A DNA stretch of 64,000 nucleotides, taken from the IMG/VR virus record IMGVR_UViG_3300046804_003469, positions 124,001 to 188,000 of that record. One strand, written 5' to 3'. The notes below the pieces were generated by a model. It saw only the letters and a program-made list of their open reading frames with translations, had not been told where the DNA came from and searched no databases. Shown one piece after another: positions 1 through 39,831 of the stretch (within the stretch, counting starts at the first letter, position 1; every line of letters starts with the position of its first letter). Both the position numbers and the translations under genes were made by a program.

Positions 1-3000
1 AATCATATCTATTTTCCAGGCCCCATGGATGGAAAACTTGAATTTTCTTATTACACATATGAAAATACTTTAGAATCTCAAATACTTGATTCTCAAAGAT
101 TAATTAGAAAAATATCTAATCCAGAACCTATTTCAAATCCAAAAGAAACCTATCCAGGAGCAACTGGAATTTTGGTTAATGGAGTTGAAATTTTAAATTA
201 TAAATCTAGAGATAGTATCTATTATGGATCAATAGAAGATATTGAAGTATTAAGATCAGGTGAAGGATTTAATGTTATAAATCCACCAGTGTTACAAATT
301 TCAGATTCCACAGGAACTGGTGCATCTGGACATTGCTGTGTAATTGGTTCATTGGATAGAATTGATATTGTTGATCCTGGTTTTGATTATTTGGATGAAC
401 CAAATATTGTAATCAAGGGTGGAAATGGTAAAAATGCAGAAGCTAAAGCCAGATTAATAGAATTTGAGCATATTGTATACTTTAATTCTCAACCAACTGC
501 GTTATGCGTAAACATATCTGATTCTTCCATAGTATTTCCAAAATATCATAAATTTAGAGATTTTGAATCTGTACTTTATAGATCATATGGTCAGCAAGAA
601 ATAACTGGATTAATTTCTGGATCAATATACTATGTTAAAGTTATAAACGAATATAAAGTACAGTTTTATTCTTCATTTGAAGATGCAGTTAATCAGGTTA
701 ATAAAATATCTTTAACTGGGCATGGGATTGGAAATCATAGTTTCCAGAGCACTAAAAATAAAAATAAAATAGGATCTATTGATATTATTGATCCTGGTTT
801 TGATTATGCTAATCAAAAAATTATTGTATCTTCGTCTGGAATTAATACTGCTTCTAATACTATATTATTCAAAAATCATGGTTATCAAAGTGGTGAAATA
901 GTAGTTTACAAACAGTCATCTGTAACTCCAATTTCAGGTTTAACCACACAAACTTCTTATTATGTAACTAAAGTTAATGATGATGAATTTAGACTATCAC
1001 GTATAAACAATCAAGCAGTAGGAATAAATTCTTCAAACTTAGAATTTTATTATACGACCAATCAATATGTAAATTTAACTTCAACTGGTGAAGGATTTCA
1101 TGAATTTAATTATGAACCAATTACTGTAGAAGTTATTGGAAATATTGGAGTTTCTTCTGTTTATAATCAAAATTTCAGTGCTATTCTTCAACCAATTTTT
1201 AAGGGAGGAATAAGCAAAGTATTTTTAGAAACTAATGGATCATCATACGGAAATGAAGAAATAATAAACTATGAAAAACAACCAACTTTATCTTTACTCA
1301 ATGGATCTGGTGCATTAGTAAGACCAGTAATTAACAATGGGTCTATAGTTGACATTTTAGTACAAAATCCTGGAATAAATTACAATTGTCCTCCAGATTT
1401 AGTAGTTAATGGTGATGGTTTTGGTGCTTTGTTAGTTCCTATAGTTGAAAATGGTTATTTAAAAAATATAAAAATAGTAGATGGTGGTTTTGGATATAAT
1501 GAAAGTAATACCACAATCAATGTTATCTCGACTGGTTATAATCAACAGTTAAAAGCAAACATTAAAAGTTGGAGAATTAATTTAGTTGAAAGAAGTATTC
1601 AAAATAATCAAATAACAGATGATGATGGATTTATTGATTCTGGTTTAAACGATAGTTATGGATTACAGTATACTCATGCTTACGCTGGAAGAAAATTCAG
1701 ATCTTCTACATTATCATCAAGATATGTTAATGGTGTTATTAGATATTATCCAGATTTACAAATGTCTGGAGGTATTGAAGTAGATTCTCCATCTCACTCT
1801 CCAATTATTGGTTGGGCATATGATGGAAATCCAATATATGGACCTTATGCATATTCATCCAAAGATGGAGGACCAATAAGATCATTAAAATCAAGTTATA
1901 TTTTACAAAACTCTTCAAATAGACCAAATATTTCTAATTATCCATTAGGAATATTTGTTGAAGACTATGTATATAATGCATCTGGTGATCTTGATGAATT
2001 TAACGGAAGATTTTGTAAAACACCAGAATTTCCTAATGGAGTTTATGCTTATTTTTGCACCATAGAGAATATTGTTCAATCTTTTGGACCTTTTAAAAAT
2101 TATAAAAAACCATCATTTCCATACATCATTGGAAACTACTATAAATCAAAACCAATTGATTTTAATTTCAACAAATCTTCAAATCAAAATGAAATTGATA
2201 TAAACAAAACTGGTTGGTTAAGAAATACTAGTGCTTATAATTTACTTCAAGAAAAAAGTGGTTATGATTATATTTTTAGACCTTATAAAATTAAAGAGCA
2301 ATTTTCAATTATTAACTCAGTATCTAGAGGAAAGGTAGATAGTATTGGCATTTTAACTGGGGGATATAATTATAAAGTTAAAGACAAAGTTATTTTTGAT
2401 AACACTAAAACAACAGGTACTGATGTATCTGCGGAAGTATCTTTAATAAAAGGTAAAAAGGTTAATTATGTAAGTACAGCATCATCTATTACCAACAATG
2501 TAGAACTTATTGCGGTTTCACCATCATCATTCGTAGGATTTACTACACTTCCACATGACTACAATAATAATGATATTGTATCATTTACTGGATTATATGA
2601 CTTTAAAAAATATGGGACAATCAAGATTTCAGAAAATCAATTATTCTTAAGAACTGGCGTTTCTTCAGTATTATATACTGGAATAGTTACTTATTTTGAT
2701 GTATTTGGATCTTTAGATTTTCCAAGAATTAGAGAAAATGACATTTATCAAATTGAAAACGAACAAGTAAAGATATTAAATATCGATCCATCATCATCAA
2801 GAATAAGAGTATTACGTAATCAAAATGGTACTGTTGGTGTTACATCATATAGTTCTGGATTTAGATGTTCCGAAATTACAAGAAAATTTGAAGTAAGTTT
2901 TGGTATTAGTTCTTCATATAGTTCTACACCAAACAAAGAAATATACTTTGATCCTTATGAATCTGTTGGTATAGGAACAAGCGTAGGTGTTGGAATCAAT

Positions 3001-6000
3001 TCTACAATTTATTTTTCAAATCCAGGAATTGGACCAAGATTTATAACAATTCCAACTAAAACAATATACTTACCAAATCATCAACTTAATACTGGATCTG
3101 AATTAATTTATTCATCTAATGGTGGAAGTCCAATATCAATTTCCACAGATGGTTATACTTCTACATCTTTACCTGATAATTCAGTAGTTTATGTAGCAAA
3201 AATAACTGATAATTTAATTGGCATATCCACAGTTTTGGTTGGGTTAGACACTACTGGTAATTTTTCTGGAATTGGAACAAATTCTTCAATAAGTACTCTA
3301 TATTTCACGAATAAGGGATCTGGAAATTATCATAGTTTTAAAACAAATTATCAAGATACACTAGTTGGAGATTTAAGTAGAAATACTGTAACTGTATTTA
3401 CAAAACAAAATCATAATTTACAATTAAATGATAATGTAATTATTGATATTTCATCTGGTATAACAACAGTGGTTAATGTTCAATATAATGATTATAATAG
3501 AAGATTAGTAGTTAATTCAAAAAACTTTAGTGAATCTGATGTAGATATATTGAAAAATACCATTAGAATTCCAAATCACAATTTCCAAGAAGGTCAAAAA
3601 GTAATCTATAAGTCTACAGCTTCAGGTATAGAGACAATATATTATGTTATTATTGTAGACTCTAATAGAATTAAACTTTCAAATAGTTATTATGAAGCAA
3701 CATTATCAAATCCAATAGAAGTTAATATTGGATTTGCTAAAACTTCTGGTTCATTATTACCTATTAATCCTCCAATTGAATTATATAAAAATAGTATAGT
3801 AAAATTTGATCTATCAGATTCTTCATTATCTTATAGTAAAAATTTCACTTCATATCCTGCTTTCCATTTCGATTTTTATAAGGATCCAGATTTTAAATAC
3901 AAATATGAAATTTCTGAAGGATCTTTATCTTATGAAGTGTATAGAATTGGAAAAATTGGTATTGATAGCACTGCCGCTGTTTATTTGACAATTACCGATA
4001 ACACTCCACAAAATTTATACTATAGATTAGAACCAATAGATCCAGTTAATAATTTACCAGAGAAATTAAGTATCATTGTAGATGATGATCAAGTAATTAA
4101 TCACAACAAATTATATTTTGTCGATAGTAAGTATAATGGAACTCATACAATAAGTGGAATTGGATCAACTTCATTTACATTTTCATTATTGGATACTCCA
4201 GAGAAAAATAGTTATTATCCATATGAAGGTGATTTAAATTATTACACAAATTCTTCAACTGCTTCTGGAGAAATATATGAATTAAAATTAACTTCTAAGG
4301 GTAGAAGTTATAACAATGTTCCAGATATAGTTGGTGTTGTTACAAATACTGGTAACTCTGCTATTCTCGAATGTCAAACTAACAGTATTGGTAAAATTCT
4401 TAATACTACAATTAAAGACATTGGATTTGATTATTCATCAGATTTATCTTTAAGACCATCTGCTAAACTACCTAGTTTAGTTAAATTGCAATCTTTATAT
4501 TCATTAGATTATATTGGTATTACTTCTTCTGGAAGAAATTATGTTACTCCTCCAGATTTACTTTTATTTGATGGTTATACTCAAAAAATAGTAACAGATG
4601 TTGATTTAAGATATGTCAAAAATAGAAATCGTGTAACAATTTTAAAGAATACTACTTCTCTTTATAATTCTATTCCAACAATTTTGCCAATTAATAATTC
4701 AAATGGAATAAAAATTAAATCAATCACTTACGAACCAACAACTGGAATTGCATCAGTAACTCTTGCCCCAAGTTACAGTGATAGAGATGTTTTTCCTTTT
4801 GAAGTTGGTGATAATGTTATGATTGAACATACTAGTGTAGGAATTGCTACTACTGGTAAAGGATATAATACTGAAGATTATAATTATCAGTTCTTCGAAA
4901 TTGTATCCATGGATCCAAATATTGGAGGAGCCAATGGAAGTGTAAGATTTAGTTTAAATGGATTATTGTCACCAGGAGAATATCCTGGAACATATGATTC
5001 TGATAATTCATTGGGTACAATTGTTCCCGAAAAATTCTTCCCAATATTTAAACCAGTATTAAAGAAAAATAATTTCTTTGTTGGTGAAACTGTAATTTCA
5101 AAATCATCCCAAACTACTGGTGTTGTTGATAGTTGGAATACTAATAGTAATTATCTTAAAGTATTAGAAGATAGAACAAAGTTTAATGTTGGTGAAACTA
5201 TTGTTGGAAAATCATCCAAAACGCAAGGAGTTATTTCAGATATAATAAGATTTGATGCTGTTTATGATGTTAATGGATCATCAATAGTCAGAAAAGGATG
5301 GAATCTTGATACTGGATTTTTAAATGAACATTCTCAAAGATTGCATGATAGTGATTATTATCAAAATTTCTCATATTCTTTAAAATCAAAAGTACCTTAT
5401 GATGTTTGGAACACATCCGTTTCTGTTCTCAATCATACCGCTGGATTTAAAAGATTTTCTGATTTAATTATAGAATCAGTTCCTATTCCAAAATCTAGCA
5501 ATATTGTTGGAATAGGAACTACAGTTAATGTTGGAGTTGGAACTGTACGAGATGATATTGTTGGAATGCAGACATCACAAAATAATGGAGACTTTAGTAG
5601 TAGAGTTGATATTATTGAATATGTTGATACAAATACAATTTATGATTTTGACCTAGTTAAGGAAAGAACTATTTCAAATAGATCAAATAATCTCGTTTTT
5701 AATTCTAGAGTTATACAGGATTATATTGAATCTGTAGGAAATAGAGTACTTATTCTTGATGATTTAAGTCCTAGTTTTAATAGCAATCCAAGACCTACAA
5801 TATTCACTCCAGTAGATCAATTTAATTTAAATTATTATAGATCTAAAAAATATTTTGCTTTAGTTCAGGATAGAGCAAATATTAATGGAAGACAGGCAAA
5901 CTTGGTAACATTAGTGCAAAATGGAAAATATGGATTTATAAGTCAATATGGTATTTTAAATACTATTTCTCAACTTGGATATTATGATTTTTCAATCTCT

Positions 6001-9000
6001 GGCGATAGAGGAAGTTTAGATTTTTATCCATTGCTTTATTCAATTAATAACTATGATATTTCTTTAGTTTCATTTGATACTATTGATAAATTTGTTGGAA
6101 TAGGAACTACAACTTTAGGTAATGTTGTTAAGATTGACTCATCAACATCATCTCTTCCTGTTGGATTCAGCACTCAGAAAAATATTGTTGGTATTTCAAG
6201 TACTTATAGAACTTCTAAAATTTTAGTTACTATAGGATCTACAGAAAATAATTATTATGAATACAATGAATTAACATTATTGCATGATGGTACAAATGTT
6301 AATATACTTGAATTTGGAAGATTGAATACGGATACTTTAGGATATAATGCTACTACTGGTCTTGGAACTTACAGTGCATCATTATCTGGATCAAATGTAT
6401 ATCTTAATTTCCAACCATATACATCATTAACACATAATTATGTTGTTAACACTGTAAATTTATCCATCGGCAATACAAGTACTACTGCTACGGATAGCAT
6501 TCTTCTTAGTAATAGTAATTTAAAATCTACACGAGTAGCAATTTCTTCTTCTCCATCACCATCAGCAGTTGGAATTGCCACTTACTCAAAATTATATTAT
6601 AAATCTTGTTACTTGATTGTTTCTATTGAAGATAAAACAAATCAAAAATATCAAGTATCTGAAGTAGCTTTAGTTGATGATGACATAACCACTTATCTTG
6701 TTGAATATGGAGTTGTTCCTGTAAGTTCTGGTTTAGGTACATTTTCAAGTTCAATAGTTGGAAGTGGTTCTACATTATCTACTGTTGTATATTTTACACC
6801 AAACCCAAACATTAATGCGGAAGTTAGAGTATTCCAGACTTCTTTAGGAAATTATGGATCCAATTTAACCTCATTATCCACAATAGATTTTGCTAAAAAT
6901 GCTGCAATAAATGCAAATAATGCAATTTATATTGGCAATGAATTAGATATTAAAAAGCAATTTGATTTGACATATAAGCAAAATCCAGTATTTGTACAAT
7001 CATTTGATTCTACTGATAATACAGTTGTAGATATTGCAAACGATCAATTCAATTTAATAAATCATTATTTTACGAATGGTGAAAAAGTAGTGTATTCTTA
7101 TGGTGATCCAACTTTATATTCTCCCGTAGGAATTGCAACTACAACAATTTCTGGAATATCGACAAATGTATTACCTTCATCACTTTATATTGTAAAGGTA
7201 AATGAATCTGCAGTTAAAGTTGCAGCATCGGCAACTGATGCATTATCATCTCCACCAAAAATATTGGATATTAATTCTCTTGGAATAGGTACGGTTCATA
7301 CATTTACAGCAGTCAATCAAAATGTCAAATCTTTAATTACAATTGATAATGTAATACAATCACCAATAGTTGGGACAAATGTAACATGTTTCCTCGATTC
7401 TGATATCGGAGGATCAAATGAAACATTAGTATTTACTGGTATTAGTTCGTTCTTTGGTGGTGATATTGTTCAAATTGATGATGAGTTGATGAAAATTCAA
7501 GCAATAGGAATTGGATCAACAAATTATGTTCTTGTCCAAAGACCTTGGTTGGGAACAGTAGCAAAACCTCATAGTAAAAACAGTTTAATTAAAAAGGTAA
7601 GTGGTAATTATAATATTGTTGATAATACTTTATACTTTGCCGAAGCACCTTATGGTAAATTTATACCTCCAAATACTTTCAATGATCCACTTGAAGTTGA
7701 TTATACTGGTTTAATAACAGCTTCATCATTCTCTGGAAGAATATTTTTAAGGTCTGGATTAAACAATTCTGGTTCCGAAGCTTATTCTGGAAATTATATT
7801 TTTGATGATATTTCTCAACAGTTCAATGGTACAAGAAATTCATTTAATATAACATCAAACAATCAAAATATTACTGGATTTTCAACAGGAAATGCAATAG
7901 TTTTATATAATGATATTTTCCAAAATCCTTTAGAATTTAATTCAATCAATAATATTGCAGATTACAGATTATTAGAAAATTCTGGAATTACATCAATTAC
8001 CTTTACTGGATCTAATTTATCTGCAAAATATGATATTAATACTGGCAATCTTCCTCGTGGTGGTATTATTTTATCAGTTGGATCATCTCAGGGATATGGT
8101 TATCAACCTTTAATCTCTGCGGGTGGTACATGTACATTATCTGGAATAGGTTCTATACAATCAATTAGTATCGGTAATAGTGGATCTGGATATAGAGTAG
8201 GAATTCAAACAGTTAGAGTTGGAGTTCAAACTTACAGTGTTGGGAAACCGAATATTACTTATGTTGGAATTGCTTCAATATCAAAAGGTAATATTGTAAG
8301 TGTTGCAATTACTAATCCAGGAGTAGGATATACCAACTATTCAACTTTTGCATATTCATATACATCTGCACAAATTTCTGCTGGTTCTACCATCATACCT
8401 TTGAATAATATTACTAATATTATTACTGGAAATTACATTTCAGTTGGTTCTGCATTGACAAATGTTTATGTTACTGGAATTGGAAGTACTTTTGTAACTA
8501 TTGGAGTTGCGAATACCACAAATAGAATTATTTCATATGGTTCTACAACAACCATCAAATCTTATAGTCCACCTAAAGTAATTTTTGACGACCCAATACC
8601 ATACACAAACATACCTTTATCTTATAGTTCTGAGTCTACTCCTGGAATTGGTACGCAGGCAACTATAGATATTGTAGTTGGACAAGGTTCAAGTGTAATT
8701 TCATTTGAAATTAAGAATTATGGTTATGCTTATGGTAATAAGGAAATACTAACTGTTCCAGTTGGAGGAAGCACTGGAATACCTACAGATACTACTAAAA
8801 CTTTTACAGAATTTAAATTATACATTGATAAAGTTTTCAATGATAAATTCTCTGGATGGACTGTTGGTGATTTACAAGTTTTAGATCCAATCAATGCATA
8901 TTTTGATGGGGTGAGAAAAGTATTTCCAATCAATTTAAATGGACAAAGAGTTTCAATTGTATCAAGAAAAGGATCTACAATAGAATTACAAGCAAATCTA

Positions 9001-10464: not shown

Positions 10465-12105
10465 ATGTCTAAATTGGGAATAAACACTGGTTCTGTTCCA
10501 AATGATGGTACTGGTGATACTTTATTGAGTGGTGCTGTAAAAATAAATACGAACTTTAATGAAATTTATAGTTCAATAGGAGATGGTTCGAATCTTGTTG
10601 TTGGTGTAGGAAAAACTGTTTTATCAATTTTACTATCTGGTAATGTTGGTGTAGGTTCTACTATACCAGCATCCAAATTGGATGTTTCTGGTAATATAAA
10701 TGGAAGTTCTATTTCTATAGGAAATACACAAATTGTCAGTGGTTCTTTCCAACTTAAAAACATTGCTTCTCTTGACTCCACTACAATTTCTACAATTGAA
10801 AACGCAATTACTCTTGCACCAAATACATTTACAGATTTGAATATAACTGGAATATCAACCTTTATTAATGGCCCTGTTTTAATTGGTGGAGGAAGTTCAA
10901 CTGGGAATGCCGCAACTGTTCTTCAAATTTCTGGAATTAATAGTAGTGTTTATGTTGGTGGAAATATTGGTATTGGAACCATAAATCCATCAAGAAGGGT
11001 TCAAGTTGCTGGTGATGCTTCAACAAATCAGTTTAACGCATCGATATCAATTACAAATACCAATAGTGCTGGATATGGAGCTTATTATGGTTTAAACGCT
11101 ACTTCAATTTCTTCTGGACGTGATTGGAGACTGGTTAGCAATGGATTATCAGATTCTGCAGGGGTTGGTAAATTTTCAATTCTCGATGTTTCTGCTGGAA
11201 GAGATAGATTAGTTATTGATAGTTCTGGAAATATTGGCATTTCATCTTTAAGTCCTTCATCGAAACTTACTGTATCTGGTGATGTTTTTATTACTGGTGT
11301 TGTAACTGCAACATCTTTTATTGGATTAACCACAGTTGCAACTAGTGTAATAGGTGGTATTGCTTCAGTAACACAGTTAAATGTAACTGGTATTGGAACT
11401 ATTAGTAATTTAAGCGGCACTACCTTTAATTACTCTTCAGGATTCATTAATGCTGGTGTAGTAACCAATATTAGTGGTACTACTTTAAATTATCCTTCAG
11501 GGTTCATTAATGCTGGTGTTGTTACTACAATTACTGGAGTAAATTTAAATTATTCTGGATTATCTACATTTACAGGTCCTGTAGTAATTGGTGGTGGTAA
11601 TTCAACAGGAATTACTTCATCAGTTCTTCAACTTGTTGGTATTAACTCAAATGCTTACATTGGTGGTAACTTAGGTATAGGTATTTCATATACTACATTA
11701 CCATTGCAAGTTGTTGGTATAGTATCAGCAACAACCGTTAGAGATGGTATTGGAACTATTAGAACAATACCACAAAACGCACAATCTTCTGGTGGAATTT
11801 ATACTGCTACCAGTTCTGATGTTGGAAAACATATTTCAATATCTTCTGGAATTGGAGTTAGTATTAATGCTGGTACTTTCTCAATTGGTGATGTTTTTTA
11901 CGTTTTCAATAATACTACTGGAACTATTACTATTGGTGCAGGTGCTGGTGTATCAATATTCTTAAGTGGAAACTACAACCCTGGTACTGGTATTAGAACT
12001 ATGATGTCGAGAGCACTTGCCACTGTTTTGTGTGTTAATAACAATACATTTGTTGCTGGTGCTCTTGCTGGAGCAGCAACAACAGCAAATGCTCCAATTG
12101 CATAA
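10465..12105 (+). CDS. Fibre/baseplate-attached protein with gp9/gp10-like N-terminal attachment domain
   Basis: N-terminus INTGSVPNDGTGDTLLSGAVKINTNFNEIY is typical of gp9/gp10-type proteins. GNVGIGT fibre repeats and internal duplications follow. Confidence 0.7.
   Translation: MSKLGINTGSVPNDGTGDTLLSGAVKINTNFNEIYSSIGDGSNLVVGVGKTVLSILLSGNVGVGSTIPASKLDVSGNINGSSISIGNTQIVSGSFQLKNIASLDSTTISTIENAITLAPNTFTDLNITGISTFINGPVLIGGGSSTGNAATVLQISGINSSVYVGGNIGIGTINPSRRVQVAGDASTNQFNASISITNTNSAGYGAYYGLNATSISSGRDWRLVSNGLSDSAGVGKFSILDVSAGRDRLVIDSSGNIGISSLSPSSKLTVSGDVFITGVVTATSFIGLTTVATSVIGGIASVTQLNVTGIGTISNLSGTTFNYSSGFINAGVVTNISGTTLNYPSGFINAGVVTTITGVNLNYSGLSTFTGPVVIGGGNSTGITSSVLQLVGINSNAYIGGNLGIGISYTTLPLQVVGIVSATTVRDGIGTIRTIPQNAQSSGGIYTATSSDVGKHISISSGIGVSINAGTFSIGDVFYVFNNTTGTITIGAGAGVSIFLSGNYNPGTGIRTMMSRALATVLCVNNNTFVAGALAGAATTANAPIA
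11401..11555 (+). repeat. Imperfect 60-bp (20-aa) tandem repeat in the fibre gene
   Basis: SGTTFNYSSGFINAGVVTNI / SGTTLNYPSGFINAGVVTTI / TGVNLNYSG. DNA ttcattaatgctggtgt recurs 60 nt apart. Confidence 0.85.
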
Positions 12106-22644: not shown

Positions 22645-22645
22645 T

Positions 22646-24079
22646 ATGCTTAATCCATTTTTCCTCCAAGGGTCAAAATCAGAACAATCTTTAGTTCAAG
22701 ATTTAATTAATGAACAACTCCGCATGTATGGAGTTGAAATTTATTATTTGCCAAGAAAGTATGTTACTAAAAATACTGTAATTAGAGAAGTAATTGAATC
22801 TAAATTTGATAATGCATATCCATTGGAAGCATATGTTGATACGTATGATGGATATGAGGGACAGGGAACTATTCTTTCAAAATTTGGCATTCAACCATTA
22901 ACAGACTTAACTGTTATTATTTCTAAAGAAAGATTTGAAACTTATATTACACCATTAATAAAAAATTTACCGAATGTAGAACTAGCAACCAGACCAAAAG
23001 AGGGAGATTTAATTTATTTTCCTCTTGGTCACAGATTATTTGAAATTAAATTTGTTGAGCACGAAAAACCTTTTTATCAACTTCAAAAAACTTATGTCTA
23101 TGAATTGAGATGTGAACTCTTTAGACTTGAAGATGAAATTATAGATACTGGAGTTGCTGATGTAGATAATACTGTGAATGGTGGAGTTGATAATTTAGGC
23201 AATACATCAATTAATGATGAAGATAGTAATACTTATATTCAAGGGCATACCCAAACTTTACAATTAGTTGGATCTGGTGTAACTGCAACTGCAATCACTA
23301 GTGTATTAAATCATGGTGTAAGATATATTGATATTTTAAATAGAGGAAATGGATATACTTCCACACCAACTATAAAAATATCATCAGCACCTTTGGGTGG
23401 ATCTACAGCAGTTGGAATTGCCTCTATGATTGATGGTCTTATTGATTGTGATGGTATAATTTCACCAAAAATACAAGCAATTCAAATTATAAATCCTGGT
23501 TATGGTTATGATGTAACACCTTCTATAATGGCAATTGGTGGAGGTGGATCTGGATTTATTGCTACATGCGTTCTTGGAGATGGAATAGTTGGAATTATTA
23601 CAGTCACAAATGGTGGATCTGGATATGTTAATAATCCTACAGTAACTATTAGTAGTCCATCTTCTGGTGAAACTGCAACCGCAACTGCTCACATTAATAC
23701 AGTTGGAATTGTTACTATGATAACTTTATCAAATACTGGATATGGTTACACTAGCGTTCCAACTATAACAATACAATCTCCAAATGTAACTGGAATTGGA
23801 ACATACGTTCCTAATGAAACTATAGTTGGAAGTATATCTCAAACTACAGCACTGGTAAGATCCTGGAATTCACTCACTAATGAGTTAATAATTTCAAATA
23901 TTTCTGGTTCATTTAAACCTGGGGAAGTTATAACAGGTTCAGAATCTGGTGCGTTTTATAATTTGAAAAAATATGTTCTTGATAATTCGATAGATAAATA
24001 TAATCAAAATTTAGAAATACAAACTGAATCTAATTCAATTATTGACTTTTCTGAATCCAACCCTTTTGGGATGCCATAA
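22646..24079 (+). CDS. gp14: Neck/head-closure protein gp14 with C-terminal beta-repeat extension
   Basis: MLNPFF...EQSLVQDLINEQLRMYGVEIYYLPR, RPKEGDLIYFP, ending DFSESNPFG. ATG 22646 preferred over TTG 22637. Confidence 0.93.
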   Translation: MLNPFFLQGSKSEQSLVQDLINEQLRMYGVEIYYLPRKYVTKNTVIREVIESKFDNAYPLEAYVDTYDGYEGQGTILSKFGIQPLTDLTVIISKERFETYITPLIKNLPNVELATRPKEGDLIYFPLGHRLFEIKFVEHEKPFYQLQKTYVYELRCELFRLEDEIIDTGVADVDNTVNGGVDNLGNTSINDEDSNTYIQGHTQTLQLVGSGVTATAITSVLNHGVRYIDILNRGNGYTSTPTIKISSAPLGGSTAVGIASMIDGLIDCDGIISPKIQAIQIINPGYGYDVTPSIMAIGGGGSGFIATCVLGDGIVGIITVTNGGSGYVNNPTVTISSPSSGETATATAHINTVGIVTMITLSNTGYGYTSVPTITIQSPNVTGIGTYVPNETIVGSISQTTALVRSWNSLTNELIISNISGSFKPGEVITGSESGAFYNLKKYVLDNSIDKYNQNLEIQTESNSIIDFSESNPFGMP

Positions 24080-29315: not shown

Positions 29316-31517
29316 ATGGCGACTCCTCAATTATCTCCAGGCGTACTCGTCAGAGAAGTTGATTTAACTGTAGGGAGAGCTGATAATGTATTAGAAAATG
29401 TTGGAGCAATTGCAGGTCCTTTCGCACTTGGTCCAGTTAATGAGATTGTAAATATTACTACAGAACAAGAACTTATTAATACTTTTGGAAAACCACTTTC
29501 AACAGATTCCCAGTATGAGTATTGGATGAGTGCATCCTCATACCTTTCTTACGGTGGTGTTCTTAAAGTAATCAGAACAGATAGTGCTAACTTAAATTGT
29601 GCAAATGCTGGCGTAAATACTGTTAGTAATGCATCAACTAAAATTAAAAATTATGATGATTATGTAGCAAACTGGTCTTCAACAAATTCAACATATATTT
29701 TTGCTGCTAAAAATCCAGGAACTTGGGGTAATGGATTAAAAGTTTGCATGATTGATGATCTTGCAGATCAAATTGTAGCAATTAACACTTCCAATCCAGG
29801 CAATGTTGGAGCAATTGTTGGATATGGAATGACTTATGCAATTACCAATACGGTGCTTGCTGGAATTGGAACTACTACTCCATTTACTGGTTATCTTAAA
29901 GCAATTGTTACTGGTGTAACAACAGATACACAAACTTCAAATAGTTTAGTTTCTGTTAAAATTGTTTCCAGAGTATCTTCTGGTGGAACAGAATATCCTG
30001 TATCTTATGCAGAAGGATTTGTTGGTGCTGCATTTAGTTCATATAGTTCAAACGTTAATTTTATTAACAATAGTGGTACTCTTGCTGGAACTGTTACACT
30101 TGGAATTGCTTCAGATTGGTATGGACAGCAAACTTTAGGACTGACAAATACAACAATTTATTGGAAATCAATTGCACCAAAGCCAATCTCAAATAGTTTT
30201 ACATTAAATAGATCTGGAAAAAATGATGGTCTTCATGTTGTAGTTGTTGATGATAGAGGATCTATAACTGGAGTTACTGGTAATATTTTAGAAAAGCATC
30301 TGTTCTTATCAAAATCAGCAGATTCTGTTTCAACCAGAAATTCACCACAAAGAAACTATTGGAAGGATTACTTAGCATTAAGTTCTGATTATCTCTATGC
30401 TGGTGATAATCCATCAGTTGGAGCAGATACTTATTGGAACACACAATATCGTGCTACAGGTTTCTCAACTGCTTTCAATCCATATTCTGAATCTCAAGGT
30501 GCATGGAATCAAAATGCACAAGGAGTTACTTTCAGTGCATTAGGAAATCTAACATATACATTATCTGGAGGAAAAGATTATTATGGAACTGATAATGTAT
30601 CGAACGGAATGGTTGCAAAATTAGGTGATTTATATACTTCATACGACTTATTTGCAAGCAAAGAAAATTCTAAGGTTGACTTCTTAATCATGGGTCCTGG
30701 ACTTGATAATAAATCTGAATCTCAAGCAAAAGCAAATCATCTGATTGCAATTGCCGATGGAAGAAAAGATTGTGTTGCAGTTATTTCTCCACACAGATCA
30801 GATCTGGTAAATGTAACTAATGCAGAAACACAAACAAATAATGTAATTCAGTTCTTTAGTCCACTTTCCTCATCCTCATATGCAGTATTTGATAGTGGAT
30901 ATAAGTATACTTATGATAGATTTAATAACCTGTTTAGATATATCCCATGTAATGCGGATATTGCTGGATTAATGTGCAGAACTGGAATTCAAGCCTATCC
31001 TTGGTTCTCACCTGCTGGTCAACAGCGTGGAATTTTAAATAATGCAATTAAACTTGCATATAATCCAAACCAAGCACAAAGAGATAGACTTTATCCATTG
31101 AGAATTAATTCAGTTATAAATCAACCTGGAATTGGTATTTTACTCTTTGGAGATAAAACTGCTCTTGGATATGATTCGGCATTTGATAGAATTAATGTTA
31201 GAAGATTGTTCTTAACTGTTGAGCAAGCACTTCAAAAGTCTGCACAAGCACAACTGTTCGAATTAAATGATCAAATTACAAGAGCAAACTTCGTAAATAT
31301 TGTTGAACCTTATTTACGTGATGTTCAAGCTAAGAGAGGATTATATGATTTCAGAGTGATCTGCGATGAGACTAACAACACTCCTGATATTATTGATAAT
31401 AATGAGTTTAGAGCAGATATCTATCTCAAACCAGCTAAGTCTATCAACTATGTAACTATTACATTTGTTGCTACGAGAACTGGAGTCTCGTTCGAAGAAG
31501 TTGCTGGTAGAGTTTAA
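29316..31517 (+). CDS. gp18: Tail sheath protein gp18
   Basis: LSPGVLVREVDLT, PWFSPAG, AFDRINVRRLF, KPAKSINYV. Confidence 0.98.
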   Translation: MATPQLSPGVLVREVDLTVGRADNVLENVGAIAGPFALGPVNEIVNITTEQELINTFGKPLSTDSQYEYWMSASSYLSYGGVLKVIRTDSANLNCANAGVNTVSNASTKIKNYDDYVANWSSTNSTYIFAAKNPGTWGNGLKVCMIDDLADQIVAINTSNPGNVGAIVGYGMTYAITNTVLAGIGTTTPFTGYLKAIVTGVTTDTQTSNSLVSVKIVSRVSSGGTEYPVSYAEGFVGAAFSSYSSNVNFINNSGTLAGTVTLGIASDWYGQQTLGLTNTTIYWKSIAPKPISNSFTLNRSGKNDGLHVVVVDDRGSITGVTGNILEKHLFLSKSADSVSTRNSPQRNYWKDYLALSSDYLYAGDNPSVGADTYWNTQYRATGFSTAFNPYSESQGAWNQNAQGVTFSALGNLTYTLSGGKDYYGTDNVSNGMVAKLGDLYTSYDLFASKENSKVDFLIMGPGLDNKSESQAKANHLIAIADGRKDCVAVISPHRSDLVNVTNAETQTNNVIQFFSPLSSSSYAVFDSGYKYTYDRFNNLFRYIPCNADIAGLMCRTGIQAYPWFSPAGQQRGILNNAIKLAYNPNQAQRDRLYPLRINSVINQPGIGILLFGDKTALGYDSAFDRINVRRLFLTVEQALQKSAQAQLFELNDQITRANFVNIVEPYLRDVQAKRGLYDFRVICDETNNTPDIIDNNEFRADIYLKPAKSINYVTITFVATRTGVSFEEVAGRV

Positions 31518-34390: not shown

Positions 34391-35821
34391 ATGGCTCAGT
34401 GGAATGTAACTACACAAGATTATTTAAATCAAGAAAGAAGTTTATTTGAAGTCGTTGGTGTCGCTTCCAGTGATGGACAAATTATTAGTGCTCAAAATCC
34501 ATTCCCAGTAACTGGAACAGTTGGAATATCATCAGAAACACTTGTAACAATCAATGCAGATACAAATTCCGTAGATGCTTTTGGAAGACAAAGAGTATCT
34601 GAACCCTTTACTCTTGGTGATTATAAACATCTTTATGCAATTGATCCAAACTTTTTAGATAGTTATTCTGGTGCTGGATCTACAGTATCATTTTTATCAA
34701 ACCAAGCGTGTGCAAGATTATCTACTGGTATTGGATCTACTGCATATTCAGTTCATCAAACTAAATTTTATCATCATTATCAACCAGGAAAATCACAATT
34801 AATTTTCAGTTCTTTTAATTTTTATGCACCCCAACAAAATGCAACAAAAAGAACTGGATACTTTGATGATAGAGATGGAATATTTTTTGAACAAGTTGGA
34901 CTTAGCACTTCAGATGGTATAAATGCTGGTATAGGAACTTATAACTGGGTTATAAGAAGTTATGTTACTGGAATTGCATCAGAAACAAGAATTCCAAGAT
35001 CTCAATGGAATAGAGATAAATTTAATGGAACTGGGGCATCTGGTATAACTCTTGATTTTACAAAAACTCAACTTGCATTTATTGATTTTCAATGGTTAGG
35101 GGTAGGTAGAGTTCGTTGTGGTTTTGCTCACGATGGAAAATTAGTGACTGCACACGAATTTTATCACTCAAATAATTTACCTACAGTATATCTTGCAAAT
35201 CCCAATCTTCCAGTTCGTTGCGAACTTAGAAACACTGGTGTTGGTATTGGAGCATCATTTGATCAAATTTGTGCCACCGTAATGTCTGAAGGTGGATATG
35301 TAGAAAGTGGAATTGATTTTTCTCATACTATGCTTACCACAAGAACAACTCCAACCCCAGCAGGAACAGAGTTTCCTTTGATTGCTATTCGCCTTAAAAA
35401 TAGTTTTCAAGGTTATCCAAATAGAATGTCAGTCAGATTGAATAACTTATCAATTTATTGCGAAACGAATAGTATTTCATATAGAGTTGTTAAACTTCCA
35501 AGTTCCTCATTTTTAAGTAATGCAGGAACTTTAACTTGGACTTCTGCAGCAAATGATAGTGGTGTGGAATACTGTATTGATGCAACAACTTATTCTGATG
35601 GAGATGAGTTTGCATCAGGATTTGTTCCTTCTGGAGCATCTCAAAACTCACTTTCTCCAGTTGCATCAGGGCAACTAAGTTCAGCAAAGAAAAATATTAT
35701 TGTTCAGAATATTGACTCAACAAGTTCAGAAGTTTATGCAATTATTGTGAGAACAATTACAACGACTGGAAATGCAACCGCAAACGTTGCTTGTTCATTA
35801 CAATGGAGAGAGATATATTAA
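34391..35821 (+). CDS. 476-aa hypothetical beta-rich (virion?) protein
   Basis: Long clean ORF with DAFGRQRVSEP, YQPGKSQL and DFQWLGVGRVRCGF motifs; carries GIGT motifs. Confidence 0.75.
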   Translation: MAQWNVTTQDYLNQERSLFEVVGVASSDGQIISAQNPFPVTGTVGISSETLVTINADTNSVDAFGRQRVSEPFTLGDYKHLYAIDPNFLDSYSGAGSTVSFLSNQACARLSTGIGSTAYSVHQTKFYHHYQPGKSQLIFSSFNFYAPQQNATKRTGYFDDRDGIFFEQVGLSTSDGINAGIGTYNWVIRSYVTGIASETRIPRSQWNRDKFNGTGASGITLDFTKTQLAFIDFQWLGVGRVRCGFAHDGKLVTAHEFYHSNNLPTVYLANPNLPVRCELRNTGVGIGASFDQICATVMSEGGYVESGIDFSHTMLTTRTTPTPAGTEFPLIAIRLKNSFQGYPNRMSVRLNNLSIYCETNSISYRVVKLPSSSFLSNAGTLTWTSAANDSGVEYCIDATTYSDGDEFASGFVPSGASQNSLSPVASGQLSSAKKNIIVQNIDSTSSEVYAIIVRTITTTGNATANVACSLQWREIY

Positions 35822-35856: not shown

Positions 35857-36408
35857 ATGACTCATAGACCAGTTGGAGCTGGTGTTTCAATCGCCACTTC
35901 CATAACTTCAGCACAATCAAGTGCATTTACATGCCAATCAAATGCAATTCGTTTAGTTGCATCTGGTGCTGGTGCATTTGTTGCGATTGGCACAAATCCA
36001 ACTGCAACTACTTCAGATTATTATATTCCAGCAAATACTGCAGCAGTTCTCACTCTTGATATTGGTTCACAAAGAGTAGTTGGTGTTACTACTGGAACAA
36101 CCACAATTATAGATTTTCCAGAAGGAACTGGTTCACCATTTGATGTTGGAGAAACAGTAACTTTGACTGCATCAAGTCAAACATATTATAACTTCACTCA
36201 TGCAACTGTTGCTTCAGTAAATAATTCTTCTGGGGTTGGTGGTTATTATTCCACAAGAATTGTAGTAAATGCCAATACTAGTGGGATTGTAACAGCATTT
36301 ACTGATGCAGATACGACTTTAAGAAAATCATTAAAAGTTGCAGCTAGAACCGATACTGGAACTGGTACACTTTATGCACAACAAATTCAAGTTACAGGAC
36401 AGGCATAA
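35857..36408 (+). CDS. 183-aa Thr/Gly-rich hypothetical structural protein
   Basis: Late promoter upstream; sits immediately before gp21. Confidence 0.75.
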   Translation: MTHRPVGAGVSIATSITSAQSSAFTCQSNAIRLVASGAGAFVAIGTNPTATTSDYYIPANTAAVLTLDIGSQRVVGVTTGTTTIIDFPEGTGSPFDVGETVTLTASSQTYYNFTHATVASVNNSSGVGGYYSTRIVVNANTSGIVTAFTDADTTLRKSLKVAARTDTGTGTLYAQQIQVTGQA

Positions 36409-36409
36409 A

Positions 36410-37057: not shown

Positions 37058-37059
37058 TT

Positions 37060-37067: not shown

Positions 37068-37105
37068 AATATAGATTAAATTACTAGGTTAATCGGAGAG
37101 TTCAA

Positions 37106-38335: not shown

Positions 38336-38394
38336 TTGAATTTAATATAATTCAAACCCAAAAAACAAACACTTAGTAAAAAAGGTAAAAGCAA

Positions 38395-39831
38395 ATGTTC
38401 CATTCCGAGCATCTGCAGGAAAAGTGGGCACCACTCTTAGACTATCAGGGTCTTGATCCAATCAAAGATTCTCATCGTAGAGCTGTAACCGCTGTCCTGC
38501 TCGAAAACCAAGAGAAATTCTTAAGAGAGCAATCTGCTTTCGATAACGGTTCCATGAGTATGCTCATGGAGTCCCCAACCAATAGTGCAAACGCTGCTGG
38601 CGCAACAGGTGGATTTGGCGGCGGCGCTGCTGCTGGCGGTCCTACTGCTGGTTTTGATCCAGTTCTGATTTCACTCATTCGTCGTTCAATGCCTAACTTG
38701 GTCGCTTATGACCTCGCTGGCGTTCAACCAATGAGTGGTCCTACTGGACTCATCTTCGCAATGCGTTCACGTTATACCAATCAAAACGGTACTGAGACAT
38801 TCTTCAACGAAGTAGATACTGCATTCTCAGGTCAGAATGCTGGTGGTACTCTTGTTGGATTTGCTGACACTAGTGCTGGTATTGGTACAACTGCACAGTC
38901 TGGTTCTAACCCATCAATTCTGAACCCAACTGCTAGTGCATCACAAACCGATTATAACGTCGGTGAAGGTATGCTCACTGGCGATTCAGAAAATCTTGAT
39001 GGTAACAGCACTGGTGCTTTCAACCAGATGGCATTCTCAATCGAGAAAGTCACTGTTACTGCACGTTCAAGAGCACTGAAAGCCGAGTATTCATTAGAAC
39101 TCGCACAAGACCTCAAGGCAATCCATGGTCTGAACGCTGAGGCTGAGTTAGCAAACATTCTCTCAACCGAGATTCTTGCTGAAATCAACCGTGAAGTTAT
39201 CAGAACCATCTACAAGATTGCTGAACAGGGTGCTGTAGAAAATACCGCAACTGCTGGTGTATTCGACCTCGACGTTGATTCAAACGGTCGTTGGTCAGTT
39301 GAGAAGTTCAAGGGTCTTCTGTTCCAGATCGAAAGAGACGCAAACAGAATCGCTCAGAGAACTCGTAGAGGAAAGGGTAACATCATCATGTGCTCTGCTG
39401 ACGTTGCTTCAGCACTGACCATGGCTGGTGTTCTCGATTACACCCCTGCGCTCAATGCTAACCTCAATGTTGATGACACTGGTAACACCTTCGCTGGTGT
39501 TCTCCAAGGTCGTTACAGAGTTTATATCGACCCATATGCTGCAAACCTTGCTGCTGATAACAGCGGTCTCGCACAGGGCACCAACCAATACTACGTTGTT
39601 GGTTATAAGGGTTCCAGCCCATATGATGCTGGTCTCTTCTATTGCCCATATGTTCCTCTCCAAATGGTACGTGCCGTTGGTGAGAACTCCTTCCAGCCCA
39701 AGATTGGCTTCAAGACCCGTTACGGTATTGTTGCTAACCCATTTGCTGAAGGTACAACCCAAGGTCTCGGCAGACTCAAAGTTAACGCAAACCGTTACTA
39801 CAGAAGAGTTGCTATCAAGAACCTCATGTGA
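38395..39831 (+). CDS. gp23: Major capsid protein gp23
   Basis: EKWAPLL, GVQPMSGPTGLIFAMRSRY, RALKAEYSLELAQDLKAIHGLNAEAEL, FQPKIGFKTRYG. Confidence 0.99.
   Translation: MFHSEHLQEKWAPLLDYQGLDPIKDSHRRAVTAVLLENQEKFLREQSAFDNGSMSMLMESPTNSANAAGATGGFGGGAAAGGPTAGFDPVLISLIRRSMPNLVAYDLAGVQPMSGPTGLIFAMRSRYTNQNGTETFFNEVDTAFSGQNAGGTLVGFADTSAGIGTTAQSGSNPSILNPTASASQTDYNVGEGMLTGDSENLDGNSTGAFNQMAFSIEKVTVTARSRALKAEYSLELAQDLKAIHGLNAEAELANILSTEILAEINREVIRTIYKIAEQGAVENTATAGVFDLDVDSNGRWSVEKFKGLLFQIERDANRIAQRTRRGKGNIIMCSADVASALTMAGVLDYTPALNANLNVDDTGNTFAGVLQGRYRVYIDPYAANLAADNSGLAQGTNQYYVVGYKGSSPYDAGLFYCPYVPLQMVRAVGENSFQPKIGFKTRYGIVANPFAEGTTQGLGRLKVNANRYYRRVAIKNLM

What the first reader, a model, noticed from the sequence alone, without database searches (positions are those of the whole stretch)
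25..39831. Virion-wide 'GIGT' motif: candidate sequon for a shared virion modification
Seen: the motif [VTSA]-G-[IVL]-[GSAT]-[TS] recurs dozens of times in gp7 (VGIGT, TGIVT, IGIST, VGIATT, SGIST, TGITT). It also occurs in unrelated folds: fibre, gp8 (VGLGT, SGIST), VrlC (NGIST, SGIGST, VGLST), gp13 (VGITTT), gp14 (VGIAS, VGIVT, TGIGT), gp18 (AGIGTT), the 476-aa and 183-aa proteins, and gp23 (SAGIGTT, 38872-38892). I did not notice it in terminase, portal, scaffold or replication proteins. Inference: a motif shared by non-homologous exterior proteins looks like a recognition signal. Possible roles are Ser/Thr O-glycosylation by a phage glycosyltransferase or docking of a decoration protein.
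Basis: partly seen in the sequence, partly recalled or inferred. Interest (0 to 1): 0.8.

Follow-up and report, generated by a model that had tools for sequence, protein, structure and literature searches.

The report
Clade-specific virion motif in cyanophages
A five-residue motif (V/T/S-Gly-Ile/Val/Leu-small-Thr/Ser) is about ten times too frequent in the tail, neck, sheath and capsid-surface proteins of one lineage of marine T4-like cyanophages; that same lineage alone carries a conserved glycosyltransferase-like gene next to its baseplate genes, so coating of the virus particle with sugars is a testable but unproven idea.

Summary
The window is the structural module of a T4-like cyanomyovirus. 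The strict motif occurs 55 times in virion genes against about 5 expected, and 0 times in 27 non-virion genes (about 0.4 expected). GIGT is the top non-low-complexity 4-mer (14 v 0.67). The signal is in the protein frame only.

It is not a general property of beta-rich phage proteins. Six members of one gp8-monophyletic clade are 7-15x enriched: this genome, S-SM2, P-SSM2, P-TIM68, ACG-2014f and S-8S56. Six other cyanomyovirus lineages, pelagiphage HTVC008M, T4 and P-SSP7 are at chance.

Within the clade most gp7 sites are positionally conserved. VrlC gains the motif at different positions in different genera. Conserved proteins (gp23, gp13, gp8) carry it where outgroups have other residues.

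The same clade alone carries GT25/GT11 sugar genes. It also has a 69-86% conserved GT-A-like gene upstream of gp25-gp6-gp7, about 6 kb upstream of this window.

In the fibre the motif belongs to a known structural capping loop. In models it lies at strand-loop junctions.

Best reading (about 0.4): a recognition signal for a clade-specific modifying enzyme, probably a protein O-glycosyltransferase. Main rival (about 0.35): a purely structural turn motif spread by module shuffling. No modification was shown.

The parts
1..10431 (+). gp7 baseplate wedge initiator, 5'-truncated in the window (full length 4136 aa). It has 29 strict and 36 core motif sites.
   Evidence: PHROG 2885 and YHYH domain. 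Truncation. Counts. 109 homologues average 24 sites v 1.9 expected.
6358..6369 (+). gp7 site aa 2112 (GLGT), at the start of a tandem ~125-aa beta-sandwich repeat. It is in register with aa 2236 (6730-6741).
   Evidence: hhalign in-register pair, probability 97. Motif present in 100% of 48 homologues. A strand starts 2 residues after G0 in the model.
7129..7164 (+). gp7 sites aa 2369 and aa 2377 (GIAT...GIST), forming a hairpin in an NHxF..G..VxY / YYVxKV-type module.
   Evidence: Conserved in 81% and 60% of homologues.
9670..9681 (+). gp7 site aa 3216 (GIGT), opening a GxGY hairpin module shared with gp14, gp8 and VrlC.
   Evidence: BLASTP module sharing. Sequence context.
10465..12105 (+). 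gp10-N-like fibre protein with 10 core sites. Three of them (10648-10659, 10969-10980, 11236-11247) fit the capping-loop pattern G-x-G/S-[ST]-x-x-P-x-x-x-L.
   Evidence: Pfam T4_gp9_10_N. Match to Bdellovibrio Bd2133, PDB 8OND, E=2.4e-7. Capping-loop consensus in PMC10769870.
12148..13701 (+). gp8, with sites at 12814-12825 (GLGT) and 13525-13536 (GIST).
   Evidence: Pfam Phage-Gp8. Site aa 460 is present in all four clade members compared and in none of six outgroups. Site aa 223 replaces the GSGYN of other lineages.
13708..21417 (+). VrlC / DUF4815 structural protein, 6 strict sites (for example 19540-19551).
   Evidence: Sites are mostly not positionally shared inside the clade. Clade total 26 v 5.3 expected; outgroup total 10 v about 6.
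22033..22044 (+). gp13 neck protein site aa 79 (GITT).
   Evidence: [VT]GI[TV]TT in clade members. Other residues or a gap in P-HM1, S-RIM8, S-ShM2 and HTVC008M.
22637..24079 (+). gp14 neck protein. Its C-terminal GxGY modules carry sites at 23414-23425 and 23792-23803.
   Evidence: Pfam T4_neck-protein for the N-terminal half. Module sharing with gp7 and gp8.
29862..29873 (+). gp18 sheath site aa 183 (GIGT).
   Evidence: AG[IL]GTTT in the window and S-SM2. xLGTTT without the first Gly in P-HM1. Absent in T4.
34391..35821 (+). p476 virion structural protein (tandem jelly-roll), 6 sites including 34727-34738, 34928-34939 and 34970-34981.
   Evidence: PHROG 1645. 6 v 0.18 expected. Five sites conserved in 72 orthologues. 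Model and fold matches.
36082..36093 (+). p183 (DUF7243) site aa 76 (GVTT).
   Evidence: Conserved in 21 orthologues of 49-62% identity. Pfam.
38878..38889 (+). gp23 major capsid protein site aa 162 (GIGT), in a G/S/T/N/P-rich segment that aligns with part of the variable region of T4 gp23.
   Evidence: G[IL]GTT in the window, S-SM2 and P-SSM2. ATPPT in P-HM1, a gap in HTVC008M and unrelated sequence in T4, although gp23 is 65% identical overall.

Best explanation
The motif is a lineage-specific recognition signal on virion proteins for a trans-acting factor that only this cyanomyovirus clade encodes. The most likely factor is a protein O-glycosyltransferase acting on the Thr/Ser at position +3 (and often +4).

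The acceptor is presented in a Gly-capped turn at the edge of a beta-strand. The same five residues therefore also behave as a small structural unit.

The best enzyme candidate is the GT-A-like protein (phrog_1574) encoded 1-2 kb upstream of gp25-gp6-gp7. In this genome it lies about 6 kb upstream of the window start, at L101:4040-4810. The clade's GT25/GT11 and sugar-nucleotide genes could extend the glycan.

Shown: the enrichment, its restriction to virion proteins, its restriction to one clade, the positional conservation, repeated gains in VrlC, and co-occurrence with the GT genes.

Inferred: that any enzyme reads the motif, that the modification is a sugar, and which enzyme does it.
For: 1. 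Clade restriction despite similar protein architecture and composition. Strict motif, observed/expected:
- Enriched: window 55/4.9; S-SM2 87/14.3 genome-wide; P-SSM2 47/6; P-TIM68 37/4.7; ACG-2014f 21/3.1; S-8S56 50/4.7.
- At chance: P-HM1 15/17.4 genome-wide; S-PM2 3/3.3; S-RIM8 9/5.3; S-ShM2 6/6.2; S-RIM44 4/4.0; P-RSM4 5/7.2; HTVC008M 5/7.6; T4 0/1.9; P-SSP7 0/2.7.

2. VrlC is the same orthologous protein everywhere. Inside the clade it has 26 v 5.3 expected, at largely non-shared positions. Outside it has 10 v about 6. That pattern means repeated gains only where the GT genes are present.

3. Conserved orthologues (gp23, gp13, gp8, gp18) carry the motif only in the clade, in indel-prone segments.

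4. Motif windows in gp7 are no more related to each other than control windows (1.6% v 1.5-1.7% high-probability hhalign pairs). At least four different module types carry the motif.

5. The motif is a gap-free conserved island with ordinary flanks. G0 is kept in 92%, IVL in 92%, a small residue in 90% and T/S in 91% of homologues, with T and S interchanging 51:40 and almost no other replacement.

6. The GT-A-like gene is present, syntenic and 69-86% identical in all six motif-rich genomes. It is absent from P-HM1 and from the gp25-upstream regions of S-PM2 and S-RIM44. It has a profile hit to PHROG 'glycosyltransferase' at E=1.5e-7, and shows DxD and C-terminal ED...H hallmarks.

7. GT25 and GT11 occur in about 100 phage records, all from this clade. 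Sullivan 2010 found these genes only in P-SSM2, S-SM2 and S-SSM7 among 16 cyanophages, with function unknown.

8. In S-SM2 all the excess lies in virion proteins. Non-virion ORFs have 4 single hits, about the chance level.
Against: - No mass shift, glycan or enzyme activity was observed. I found no paper reporting cyanophage virion glycosylation.
- The motif-rich taxa are monophyletic in the gp8 tree (SH-like 0.999). Motif and GT genes could therefore simply share one ancestor.
- The two glycines and the hydrophobic residue are conserved as strongly as the Thr/Ser. That is typical of a turn, whereas known bacterial O-glycosylation sites are usually loose.
- In the fibre the motif is the capping loop solved in unglycosylated recombinant Bdellovibrio fibres.
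- In the two models, 13 of 14 sites lie within 2-3 residues of a strand end, and 8 of 14 Thr/Ser are inside strands. Exposure could not be measured.
- The GT assignment of phrog_1574 rests on a weak profile hit and short motifs. Pfam, NCBIfam and PDB sequence searches found nothing.
- Within the close gp7 family the excess is fully accounted for by conserved sites. Sporadic sites are at chance.
Confidence: 0.4

Rival explanations
1. The motif is purely structural. It is a Gly-hydrophobic-small-Thr turn or strand cap that belongs to a few families of small beta modules: beta-helical fibre rungs and capping loops, GxGY hairpins, and beta-sandwich repeats. These modules multiplied and were exchanged among virion genes in this clade. 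Nothing reads the motif.
For: - The fibre sites match the solved capping-loop motif of S74/MAT-type trimeric fibres.
- S-SM2 fibre proteins carry five perfect S.G.LGIGT..P...L repeats and ~35-aa rungs that each open with G[IV][SGA]T.
- The motif is in register in tandem gp7 repeats: aa 2112/2236 exactly, aa 2056/2183 nearly so.
- A GxGY module is shared by gp7, gp8, gp14 and VrlC.
- S-8S56 has longer gp13 and gp14 with more sites.
- Sites lie at strand-loop junctions, and Gly is the most conserved residue.
- The excess in the gp7 family comes from conserved sites.
- I and V interchange with genome GC content.
Against: - It does not explain why orthologous or analogous folds outside the clade do without the motif (VrlC, gp8, gp23, gp13, and giant baseplate proteins of 3000-4800 aa).
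- It does not explain why VrlC gains the motif at different positions in different genera of the clade only.
- It does not explain why motif windows are no more inter-related than control windows.
Confidence: 0.35
2. The motif is a binding site for a non-enzymatic partner, such as a decoration protein, an assembly chaperone (for example the phage Hsp20) or a fibre-assembly factor.
For: The motif is a conserved island restricted to virion proteins. hsp20 is encoded in the window at 56380-56826.
Against: - More than 50 sites sit in proteins of different symmetry and location, from capsid to fibre tips.
- hsp20 is core to all cyanomyoviruses, including the motif-poor ones.
- No clade-specific candidate partner was identified.
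Confidence: 0.07
3. The motif is a composition artefact or chance: G, I, T and S are simply abundant in these proteins.
For: The proteins are rich in G, S, T and I.
Against: - Global and local shuffles, the permuted-order control and the six-frame control all reject this.
- Compositionally similar proteins of other lineages sit at their shuffle expectation.
Confidence: 0.01
4. The motif is a DNA-level signal: a recombination linker, like the His-box motifs of T-even fibre genes, or a regulatory or restriction-related word.
For: Motif sites often lie at module starts, where recombination joints would be expected.
Against: Eleven different 12-mers encode 14 GIGT, and all wobble positions vary. 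There is no excess in other frames or on the other strand.
Confidence: 0.02

Closest known systems
Capping-loop motif of S74/MAT-type trimeric beta-helix fibres (Bdellovibrio Bd3182 and Bd2133; also phage T5 pb1 and K1F endosialidase stalks; Caulton et al. 2024, PMC10769870)
   Same: The window's fibre, and the S-SM2 tail-fibre-like protein, contain the same ...G-N-[VIL]-G-I-G-T-x-x-P-x-x-x-L-x-V... unit. There is a direct sequence match to Bd2133 at E=2.4e-7.
   Different: Only about 5 of 73 core sites in the window fit that longer pattern. No S74 chaperone domain was found in the window's fibre. The other sites lie in unrelated module types.
O-glycosylation of mycobacteriophage capsid and tail-tube proteins by phage-encoded glycosyltransferases (Freeman et al. 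2023; known to me, and cited in PMC12801897)
   Same: A phage encodes GT genes beside its structural genes. Ser/Thr-bearing virion surface proteins are the proposed targets.
   Different: There the sites are C-terminal Ser/Thr-rich tails and the modification was demonstrated. Here a defined internal five-residue motif is proposed and nothing has been demonstrated.
Cytoplasmic glycosylation of beta-helical adhesins: HMW1C on N-X-S/T of HMW1, and Aah/TibC heptosyltransferases on Ser in strand-loop-strand repeats of AIDA-I and TibA (recalled from memory, not tested here)
   Same: Many sites per protein. The acceptor sits in a short loop between beta-strands of repetitive beta-rich surface proteins. 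The enzyme acts in the cytoplasm.
   Different: The enzyme families differ (GT41 and BAHT) and so do the motifs. No homology was tested.
Chlorovirus PBCV-1 capsid glycosylation at atypical sequons by virus-encoded enzymes (from memory)
   Same: A virus-encoded glycosylation machinery with its own non-canonical sequon on virion proteins.
   Different: It is N-linked, in a eukaryotic virus, with different motifs and enzymes.
His-box (GxHxH) motifs of T-even tail-fibre genes as recombination linkers (from memory)
   Same: A short motif recurring at module boundaries of fibre proteins.
   Different: That mechanism needs DNA identity. Here the codons are diverse.

Membership tests
S74/MAT-type fibre capping loop | Consensus V-G-x-G/N-small-x-x-P-x-x-x-L | tested here: met
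   Three fibre sites (aa 62, 169, 258), plus VrlC aa 1945 and gp14 aa 386, fit the pattern. The consensus is from PMC10769870.
S74/MAT-type fibre capping loop | Sequence similarity to a solved member | tested here: met
   Fibre aa 189-320 v Bd2133 (8OND), E=2.4e-7, three aligned repeats.
S74/MAT-type fibre capping loop | C-terminal S74 intramolecular chaperone domain | tested here: not met
   Pfam finds only T4_gp9_10_N in the fibre. Non-S74 members of the MAT family do exist.
S74/MAT-type fibre capping loop | Applies to the motif as a whole | tested here: not met
   60 of 73 core sites lack the P...L extension and the other recognisable contexts.
Phage virion O-glycosylation system | Phage-encoded glycosyltransferase | tested here: inconclusive
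   L101:4040-4810 matches phrog_1574, with a hit to PHROG 'glycosyltransferase' at E=1.5e-7 and DxD-like and ED...H motifs. There are no Pfam, NCBIfam or PDB sequence hits. GT25 and GT11 are found in relatives but were not seen in the 74 kb of this genome that I hold.
Phage virion O-glycosylation system | Conserved hydroxyl acceptor in the motif | tested here: met
   T/S is kept in 91% at 35 conserved gp7 sites, with T and S interchanging.
Phage virion O-glycosylation system | Acceptor exposed on the virion surface | tested here: inconclusive
   Only secondary structure was available. Sites lie at strand-loop junctions and 8 of 14 T/S are in strands. The gp23 and gp18 sites lie in segments that vary between lineages.
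Phage virion O-glycosylation system | Motif and enzyme co-occur beyond shared ancestry | tested here: inconclusive
   Concordance is 6 of 6 against 6 of 6 cyanomyoviruses, but the motif-rich taxa form one clade in the gp8 tree. The gp13 tree is unresolved.
Phage virion O-glycosylation system | Glycan detected on virion proteins | not testable with these tools
   Published virion proteomes cover S-SM1, S-PM2 and Syn9 only.
T4-like (Kyanoviridae) structural module | gp7, gp8, gp13-gp23 homologues in T4 order | tested here: met
   Pfam and PHROG assignments, and synteny with S-SM2, P-TIM68 and P-SSM2.

The most novel reading that the evidence does not exclude
One large clade of marine cyanomyoviruses (Nilus-, Salacisa-, Haifa-, Atlaua- and Kanaloavirus and thousands of metagenomic relatives) coats its virion with O-linked glycans at a defined sequon, [VTS]-G-[IVL]-[GSAT]-[TS]. 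The modification is started by the uncharacterised GT-A-like protein phrog_1574, encoded beside the baseplate operon, and is extended by the 'LPS' GT25/GT11 gene clusters whose function has been an open question since 2005. Sequons are gained and lost on exposed loops, as in the glycan shields of animal viruses.
Probability: 0.25. Interest if true: 0.85.

Novelty: new variant of a known kind. Interest (0 to 1): 0.58.

Why it matters
T4-like cyanophages are among the most abundant viruses in the ocean. The large 'LPS/glycosyltransferase' gene clusters of their bigger genomes have had no demonstrated role; the literature suggests host-surface or DNA modification, or stuffer DNA.

This study links three things that occur together in one clade: a virion-wide motif, a highly conserved GT-like gene beside the baseplate operon, and those sugar clusters. 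That gives the question a concrete test: look for mass shifts on motif peptides in virions of S-SM2, P-SSM2 or P-TIM68, with S-PM2 or P-HM1 as controls.

If the hypothesis is true, it would add a second bacterial-virus group with glycosylated virions and the first defined phage O-glycosylation sequon. It would bear on host range, grazing, particle stickiness and decay in seawater.

If it is false, the motif remains a useful clade marker and an example of a lineage-specific structural 'dialect' in phage tail proteins.

Tried and rejected
- **Composition or local composition as the cause.** Rejected by global and block shuffles, by the permuted-order control, and by compositionally matched proteins of other lineages.
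- **A DNA-level signal.** Rejected by codon diversity and the six-frame count.
- **One repeated domain explaining all sites.** hhalign of 37 motif-centred against 37 control windows of the gp7 family gave the same rate of high-probability pairs. Regex classing puts only 13 of 73 sites in recognisable contexts.
- **A general feature of Prochlorococcus/Synechococcus phages or of T4-likes.** Rejected by P-SSP7, T4, HTVC008M and six cyanomyovirus lineages.
- **Ile-specific recognition.** The 4.8x preference for Ile in this 31% GC genome becomes I and V in roughly equal use in S-SM2, and I/V/L interchange among homologues.
- **Fold identification of the gp7 region.** Only local matches to T4 gp9-like and tailspike N-terminal beta-sandwiches. 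The model is good for aa 2000-2540 only.
- **Sequence and profile searches of the GT-A-like protein** against PDB, Pfam and NCBIfam, and hhalign against S-SM2 GT25. Nothing significant; the best local hhalign stretch merely overlays the two DxD regions.
- **Literature.** No paper mentions a GIGT-type motif in phages or glycosylated cyanophage virions.
- **Tool limits.** I did not send that sequence to any other outside tool afterwards and worked with the window genome's own copy instead.

Full report
**What the window is.** The 64-kb window (31% GC) is the structural and replication core of a T4-like cyanomyovirus.
- On the + strand it encodes gp7 (5'-truncated; full length 4136 aa), a gp10-N-like fibre, gp8, VrlC/DUF4815, gp13, gp14, gp15, gp16, a 582-aa DUF5661/DUF6321 protein, gp17, gp18, gp19 and gp20.
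- Then come three lineage-specific proteins (106, 476 and 183 aa), gp21, gp22 and gp23.
- Downstream are uvsY, uvsW, gp55, gp47/46, cobS, gp45, denV, gp44/62, regA, hsp20, gp43, uvsX, a 2OG-Fe(II) oxygenase and gp41.
- The nearest cultured phages (S-SM2, S-B05, SynMITS9220M01) are only 75-80% identical in gp23 DNA.
- The genome itself is IMG/VR contig UViG_3300046804_003469, 215 kb.

- The strict motif [VTSA]G[IVL][GSAT][TS] occurs 55 times in the 19 virion-module ORFs against about 4.9 expected from per-protein shuffles. It occurs 0 times in 27 other ORFs, where about 0.4 is expected.
- gp7 has 29 v 1.4, p476 6 v 0.18, VrlC 6 v 0.9 and the fibre 5 v 1.1.
- Shuffling inside 10-40-residue blocks does not remove the excess. 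The written order is the commonest of the 120 orders of the five residue classes, 55 against a median of 8.
- Without any prior, GIGT is the most over-represented 4-mer apart from the poly-Glu of gp22: 14 v 0.67, P=2e-14, in six proteins.
- The positions are mutually dependent.
- The signal is at protein level. There are 55 hits in the coding frame against 0-1 in each other frame, and 11 different 12-mers encode 14 GIGT.
- Two details of the finding need correction. gp7 continues upstream of the window. The carriers are not all unrelated, because gp7, gp8, gp14 and VrlC share an ~80-aa GxGY hairpin module.

**Anatomy of the sites.**
- In 48 gp7 homologues (mean 50% identity), 35 alignment columns carry the core motif in at least half of the sequences.
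- Each protein has on average 27 sites in such columns, 7.7 in intermediate columns and 2.1 sporadic. Chance predicts 5.7-7.4, so the excess consists of conserved sites.
- At these sites G0 is kept in 92%, I/V/L in 92%, a small residue in 90% and T/S in 91% of sequences, with T and S interchanging and hardly any other replacement.
- The flanks are at background conservation and tolerate indels on both sides.
- Motif-centred windows are no more similar to one another than control windows.
- The motif sits in at least four module types: an NHxF..G..VxY/YYVxKV module, a ~125-aa tandem beta-sandwich (in register at aa 2112/2236 and nearly so at aa 2056/2183), GxGY hairpins, and a QIDDE..KI module whose paralogue lacks the motif.
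- Two AlphaFold models were made: p476 (pLDDT 67) and gp7 aa 2000-2900 (reliable for 2000-2540). They place 13 of 14 sites within 2-3 residues of a strand end. In 8 a strand starts at G0-1 to G0+3, and 8 of 14 T/S are in strands.

**The fibre sites are a known structural element.**
- The fibre matches Bdellovibrio Bd2133 (8OND) at E=2.4e-7 through repeats of the form S-G-N-[VIL]-G-[IL]-[GS]-[TS]-x-x-P-x-x-K-L-x-V.
- Caulton et al. 2024 describe this element as a capping loop on the edges of trimeric beta-helices. It is shared with S74-type phage fibres.
- S-SM2 fibre proteins show five perfect copies of it, and ~35-aa rungs that each open with G[IV][SGA]T.
- Only about 5 of 73 core sites in the window fit this longer pattern.

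**The decisive comparative result: the enrichment is confined to one clade.** Strict motif, observed/expected:

| Group | Phage | Observed / expected |
|---|---|---|
| Enriched | S-SM2 (whole genome; excess all in virion proteins, 4 single hits elsewhere) | 87 / 14.3 |
| Enriched | P-SSM2 | 47 / 6 |
| Enriched | P-TIM68 | 37 / 4.7 |
| Enriched | ACG-2014f | 21 / 3.1 |
| Enriched | S-8S56 | 50 / 4.7 |
| At chance | P-HM1 (whole genome; its 4446-aa gp7 has none) | 15 / 17.4 |
| At chance | S-PM2 | 3 / 3.3 |
| At chance | S-RIM8 | 9 / 5.3 |
| At chance | S-ShM2 | 6 / 6.2 |
| At chance | S-RIM44 | 4 / 4.0 |
| At chance | P-RSM4 | 5 / 7.2 |
| At chance | pelagimyophage HTVC008M | 5 / 7.6 |
| At chance | T4 | 0 / 1.9 |
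| At chance | podovirus P-SSP7 | 0 / 2.7 |

- Sources.
- The motif-poor phages have equally large, beta-rich, G/S/T/I-rich baseplate and fibre proteins; their shuffle expectations are similar. So neither composition nor 'beta-richness' explains the difference.
- In a gp8 tree the six motif-rich taxa are monophyletic (SH-like 0.999) and sister to S-PM2/S-RIM44. A gp13 tree is less clear.

**Orthologous proteins behave differently inside and outside the clade.**
- VrlC is alignable throughout. It carries 26 sites v 5.3 expected in six clade members and 10 v about 6 in seven outgroups.
- The window's nine core VrlC sites are shared with S-SM2 in three cases, with P-TIM68 in one and with P-SSM2 in none, although those proteins have 6, 1 and 4 sites of their own.
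- gp23 is 65% identical between this phage and P-HM1. It has G[IL]GTT in the clade, ATPPT in P-HM1, a gap in HTVC008M and unrelated sequence in T4.
- gp13 has [VT]GI[TV]TT only in the clade.
- gp8 site aa 460 is present in all four clade members compared and in none of six outgroups.
- In gp18 the first Gly is added to an older xLGTTT.
- HTVC008M orthologues lack the motif at every aligned site.

**Glycosyltransferases co-occur with the motif.**
- The window itself has no GT.
- S-SM2 has two GT11 genes, a GT25 gene and a sugar-nucleotide cluster.
- tblastn finds GT25 in 99-101 phage records and GT11 in 103. All are members of this clade: S-SM2, S-B05 group, SynMITS9220M01, Bellamy, P-TIM68, P-SSM2/5, S-SSM7/6a, S-CAM7/9, ACG-2014f, S-SCSM1/2R, S-8S53/56 and others.
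- None of the roughly 360 other cyanomyovirus records has them.
- Sullivan et al. 2010 likewise found these genes only in P-SSM2, S-SM2 and S-SSM7 among 16 genomes and left their function open. Later work reads them as host-surface or DNA modification.

**A GT-A-like gene beside the baseplate operon.**
- A 250-300-aa protein (phrog_1574) lies 1-2 kb upstream of gp25-gp6-gp7 in all six motif-rich genomes, at 69-86% identity. That is far above the 31-65% identity of gp7 and gp8.
- In this genome it is at L101:4040-4810, about 6 kb upstream of the window start.
- It has no homologue in P-HM1, or in the gp25-upstream regions of S-PM2 and S-RIM44.
- It hits a PHROG 'glycosyltransferase' family at E=1.5e-7. 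It shows a hydrophobic-D-x-D-hydrophobic segment and a C-terminal G-E-D...H segment of the kind I know from GT-A/GT2 enzymes.
- It has more than 2,600 highly conserved metagenomic homologues, all unnamed.
- Pfam, NCBIfam and PDB sequence searches are silent.

**Weighing the explanations.**
- A purely structural reading explains several things: the glycines, the strand-edge position, the fibre capping loops, the in-register tandem repeats, and spread by module exchange.
- It does not explain why the same or analogous folds in sister lineages do without the motif. It does not explain why VrlC keeps gaining it at new positions only inside the clade. It does not explain why gp23, gp13 and gp8 carry it in indel-prone segments only there.
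- A clade-specific trans-acting reader explains these points and is compatible with the structural features, since it could be an enzyme that recognises a short strand-turn element.
- The co-occurring GT genes make protein O-glycosylation the obvious candidate.
- Against this reading: nothing shows that the proteins are modified, the co-occurrence is one phylogenetic event, and the GT assignment of phrog_1574 is weak.
- I put the recognition/glycosylation reading at about 0.4 and the structural reading at about 0.35. The remainder is a non-enzymatic partner or something not yet considered. Composition and DNA-level explanations are excluded.

**Novelty.** No paper in the library mentions this motif or glycosylated cyanophage virions. 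Phage virion glycosylation is known in mycobacteriophages, and the capping loop is known in fibres. So at most this is a new variant of known kinds, but it makes the long-open question of the cyanophage 'LPS' gene clusters directly testable.

Noticed in passing
L101:4040-4810 (same genome, about 6 kb upstream of window position 1): A highly conserved GT-A-like gene (phrog_1574) upstream of gp25-gp6-gp7. It is syntenic in six clade genomes and absent from P-HM1. More than 2,600 unnamed metagenomic homologues at 76-90% identity.
   Followed up: partly
window 1-24: gp7 runs off the 5' end of the window. The ATG at position 25 is internal. The full protein is 4136 aa and starts 1,980 nt upstream.
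   Followed up: yes
window 34391-35821: The 476-aa virion structural protein (phrog_1645) is modelled as a tandem jelly-roll/lectin-like fold. It lies between gp20 and gp21 and is absent at that place in S-SM2, P-SSM2 and P-HM1. More than 5,400 homologues.
   Followed up: partly
window 54221-55282: A 353-aa protein between the clamp-loader genes has a Pfam DruA (Druantia defence) match, E=4.5e-10. That is odd for a phage replication module.
   Followed up: no
window 37106-38335: The gp22 scaffold contains a long poly-glutamate run (26 overlapping EEEE). It is the only k-mer more over-represented than GIGT.
   Followed up: no
window 12814-12825: In gp8 the motif VGLGTA occupies the place of the GSGYN signature of the GxGY module found in P-HM1, S-RIM8, S-ShM2 and others.
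   Followed up: partly
window 36338-37057: gp21 protease has two adjacent core matches (GVSS, GIGS at aa 146-154). This is probably its own conserved segment rather than part of the phenomenon. The listed TTG start also overlaps the end of the 183-aa ORF by 71 nt.
   Followed up: no
window 61109-61699; L083:5591-8587: A 2OG-Fe(II) oxygenase lies between uvsX and gp41. In P-SSM2 two such oxygenases flank the GT-like gene just upstream of gp25.
   Followed up: no
window 25597-27345 and 34067-34387: The 582-aa protein between gp16 and gp17 (DUF5661 + DUF6321) shares an ~88-aa stretch with the 106-aa protein downstream of gp20 (BLASTP E=2e-5).
   Followed up: no
window 36000-40000: GC rises to 0.41 over gp21-gp23, against about 0.31 elsewhere.
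   Followed up: no
L104 (S-8S56) 31763-34817: gp13 (372 aa) and gp14 (644 aa) are much longer than in other clade members and carry 4 motif sites each. This suggests module insertion into neck proteins.
   Followed up: no
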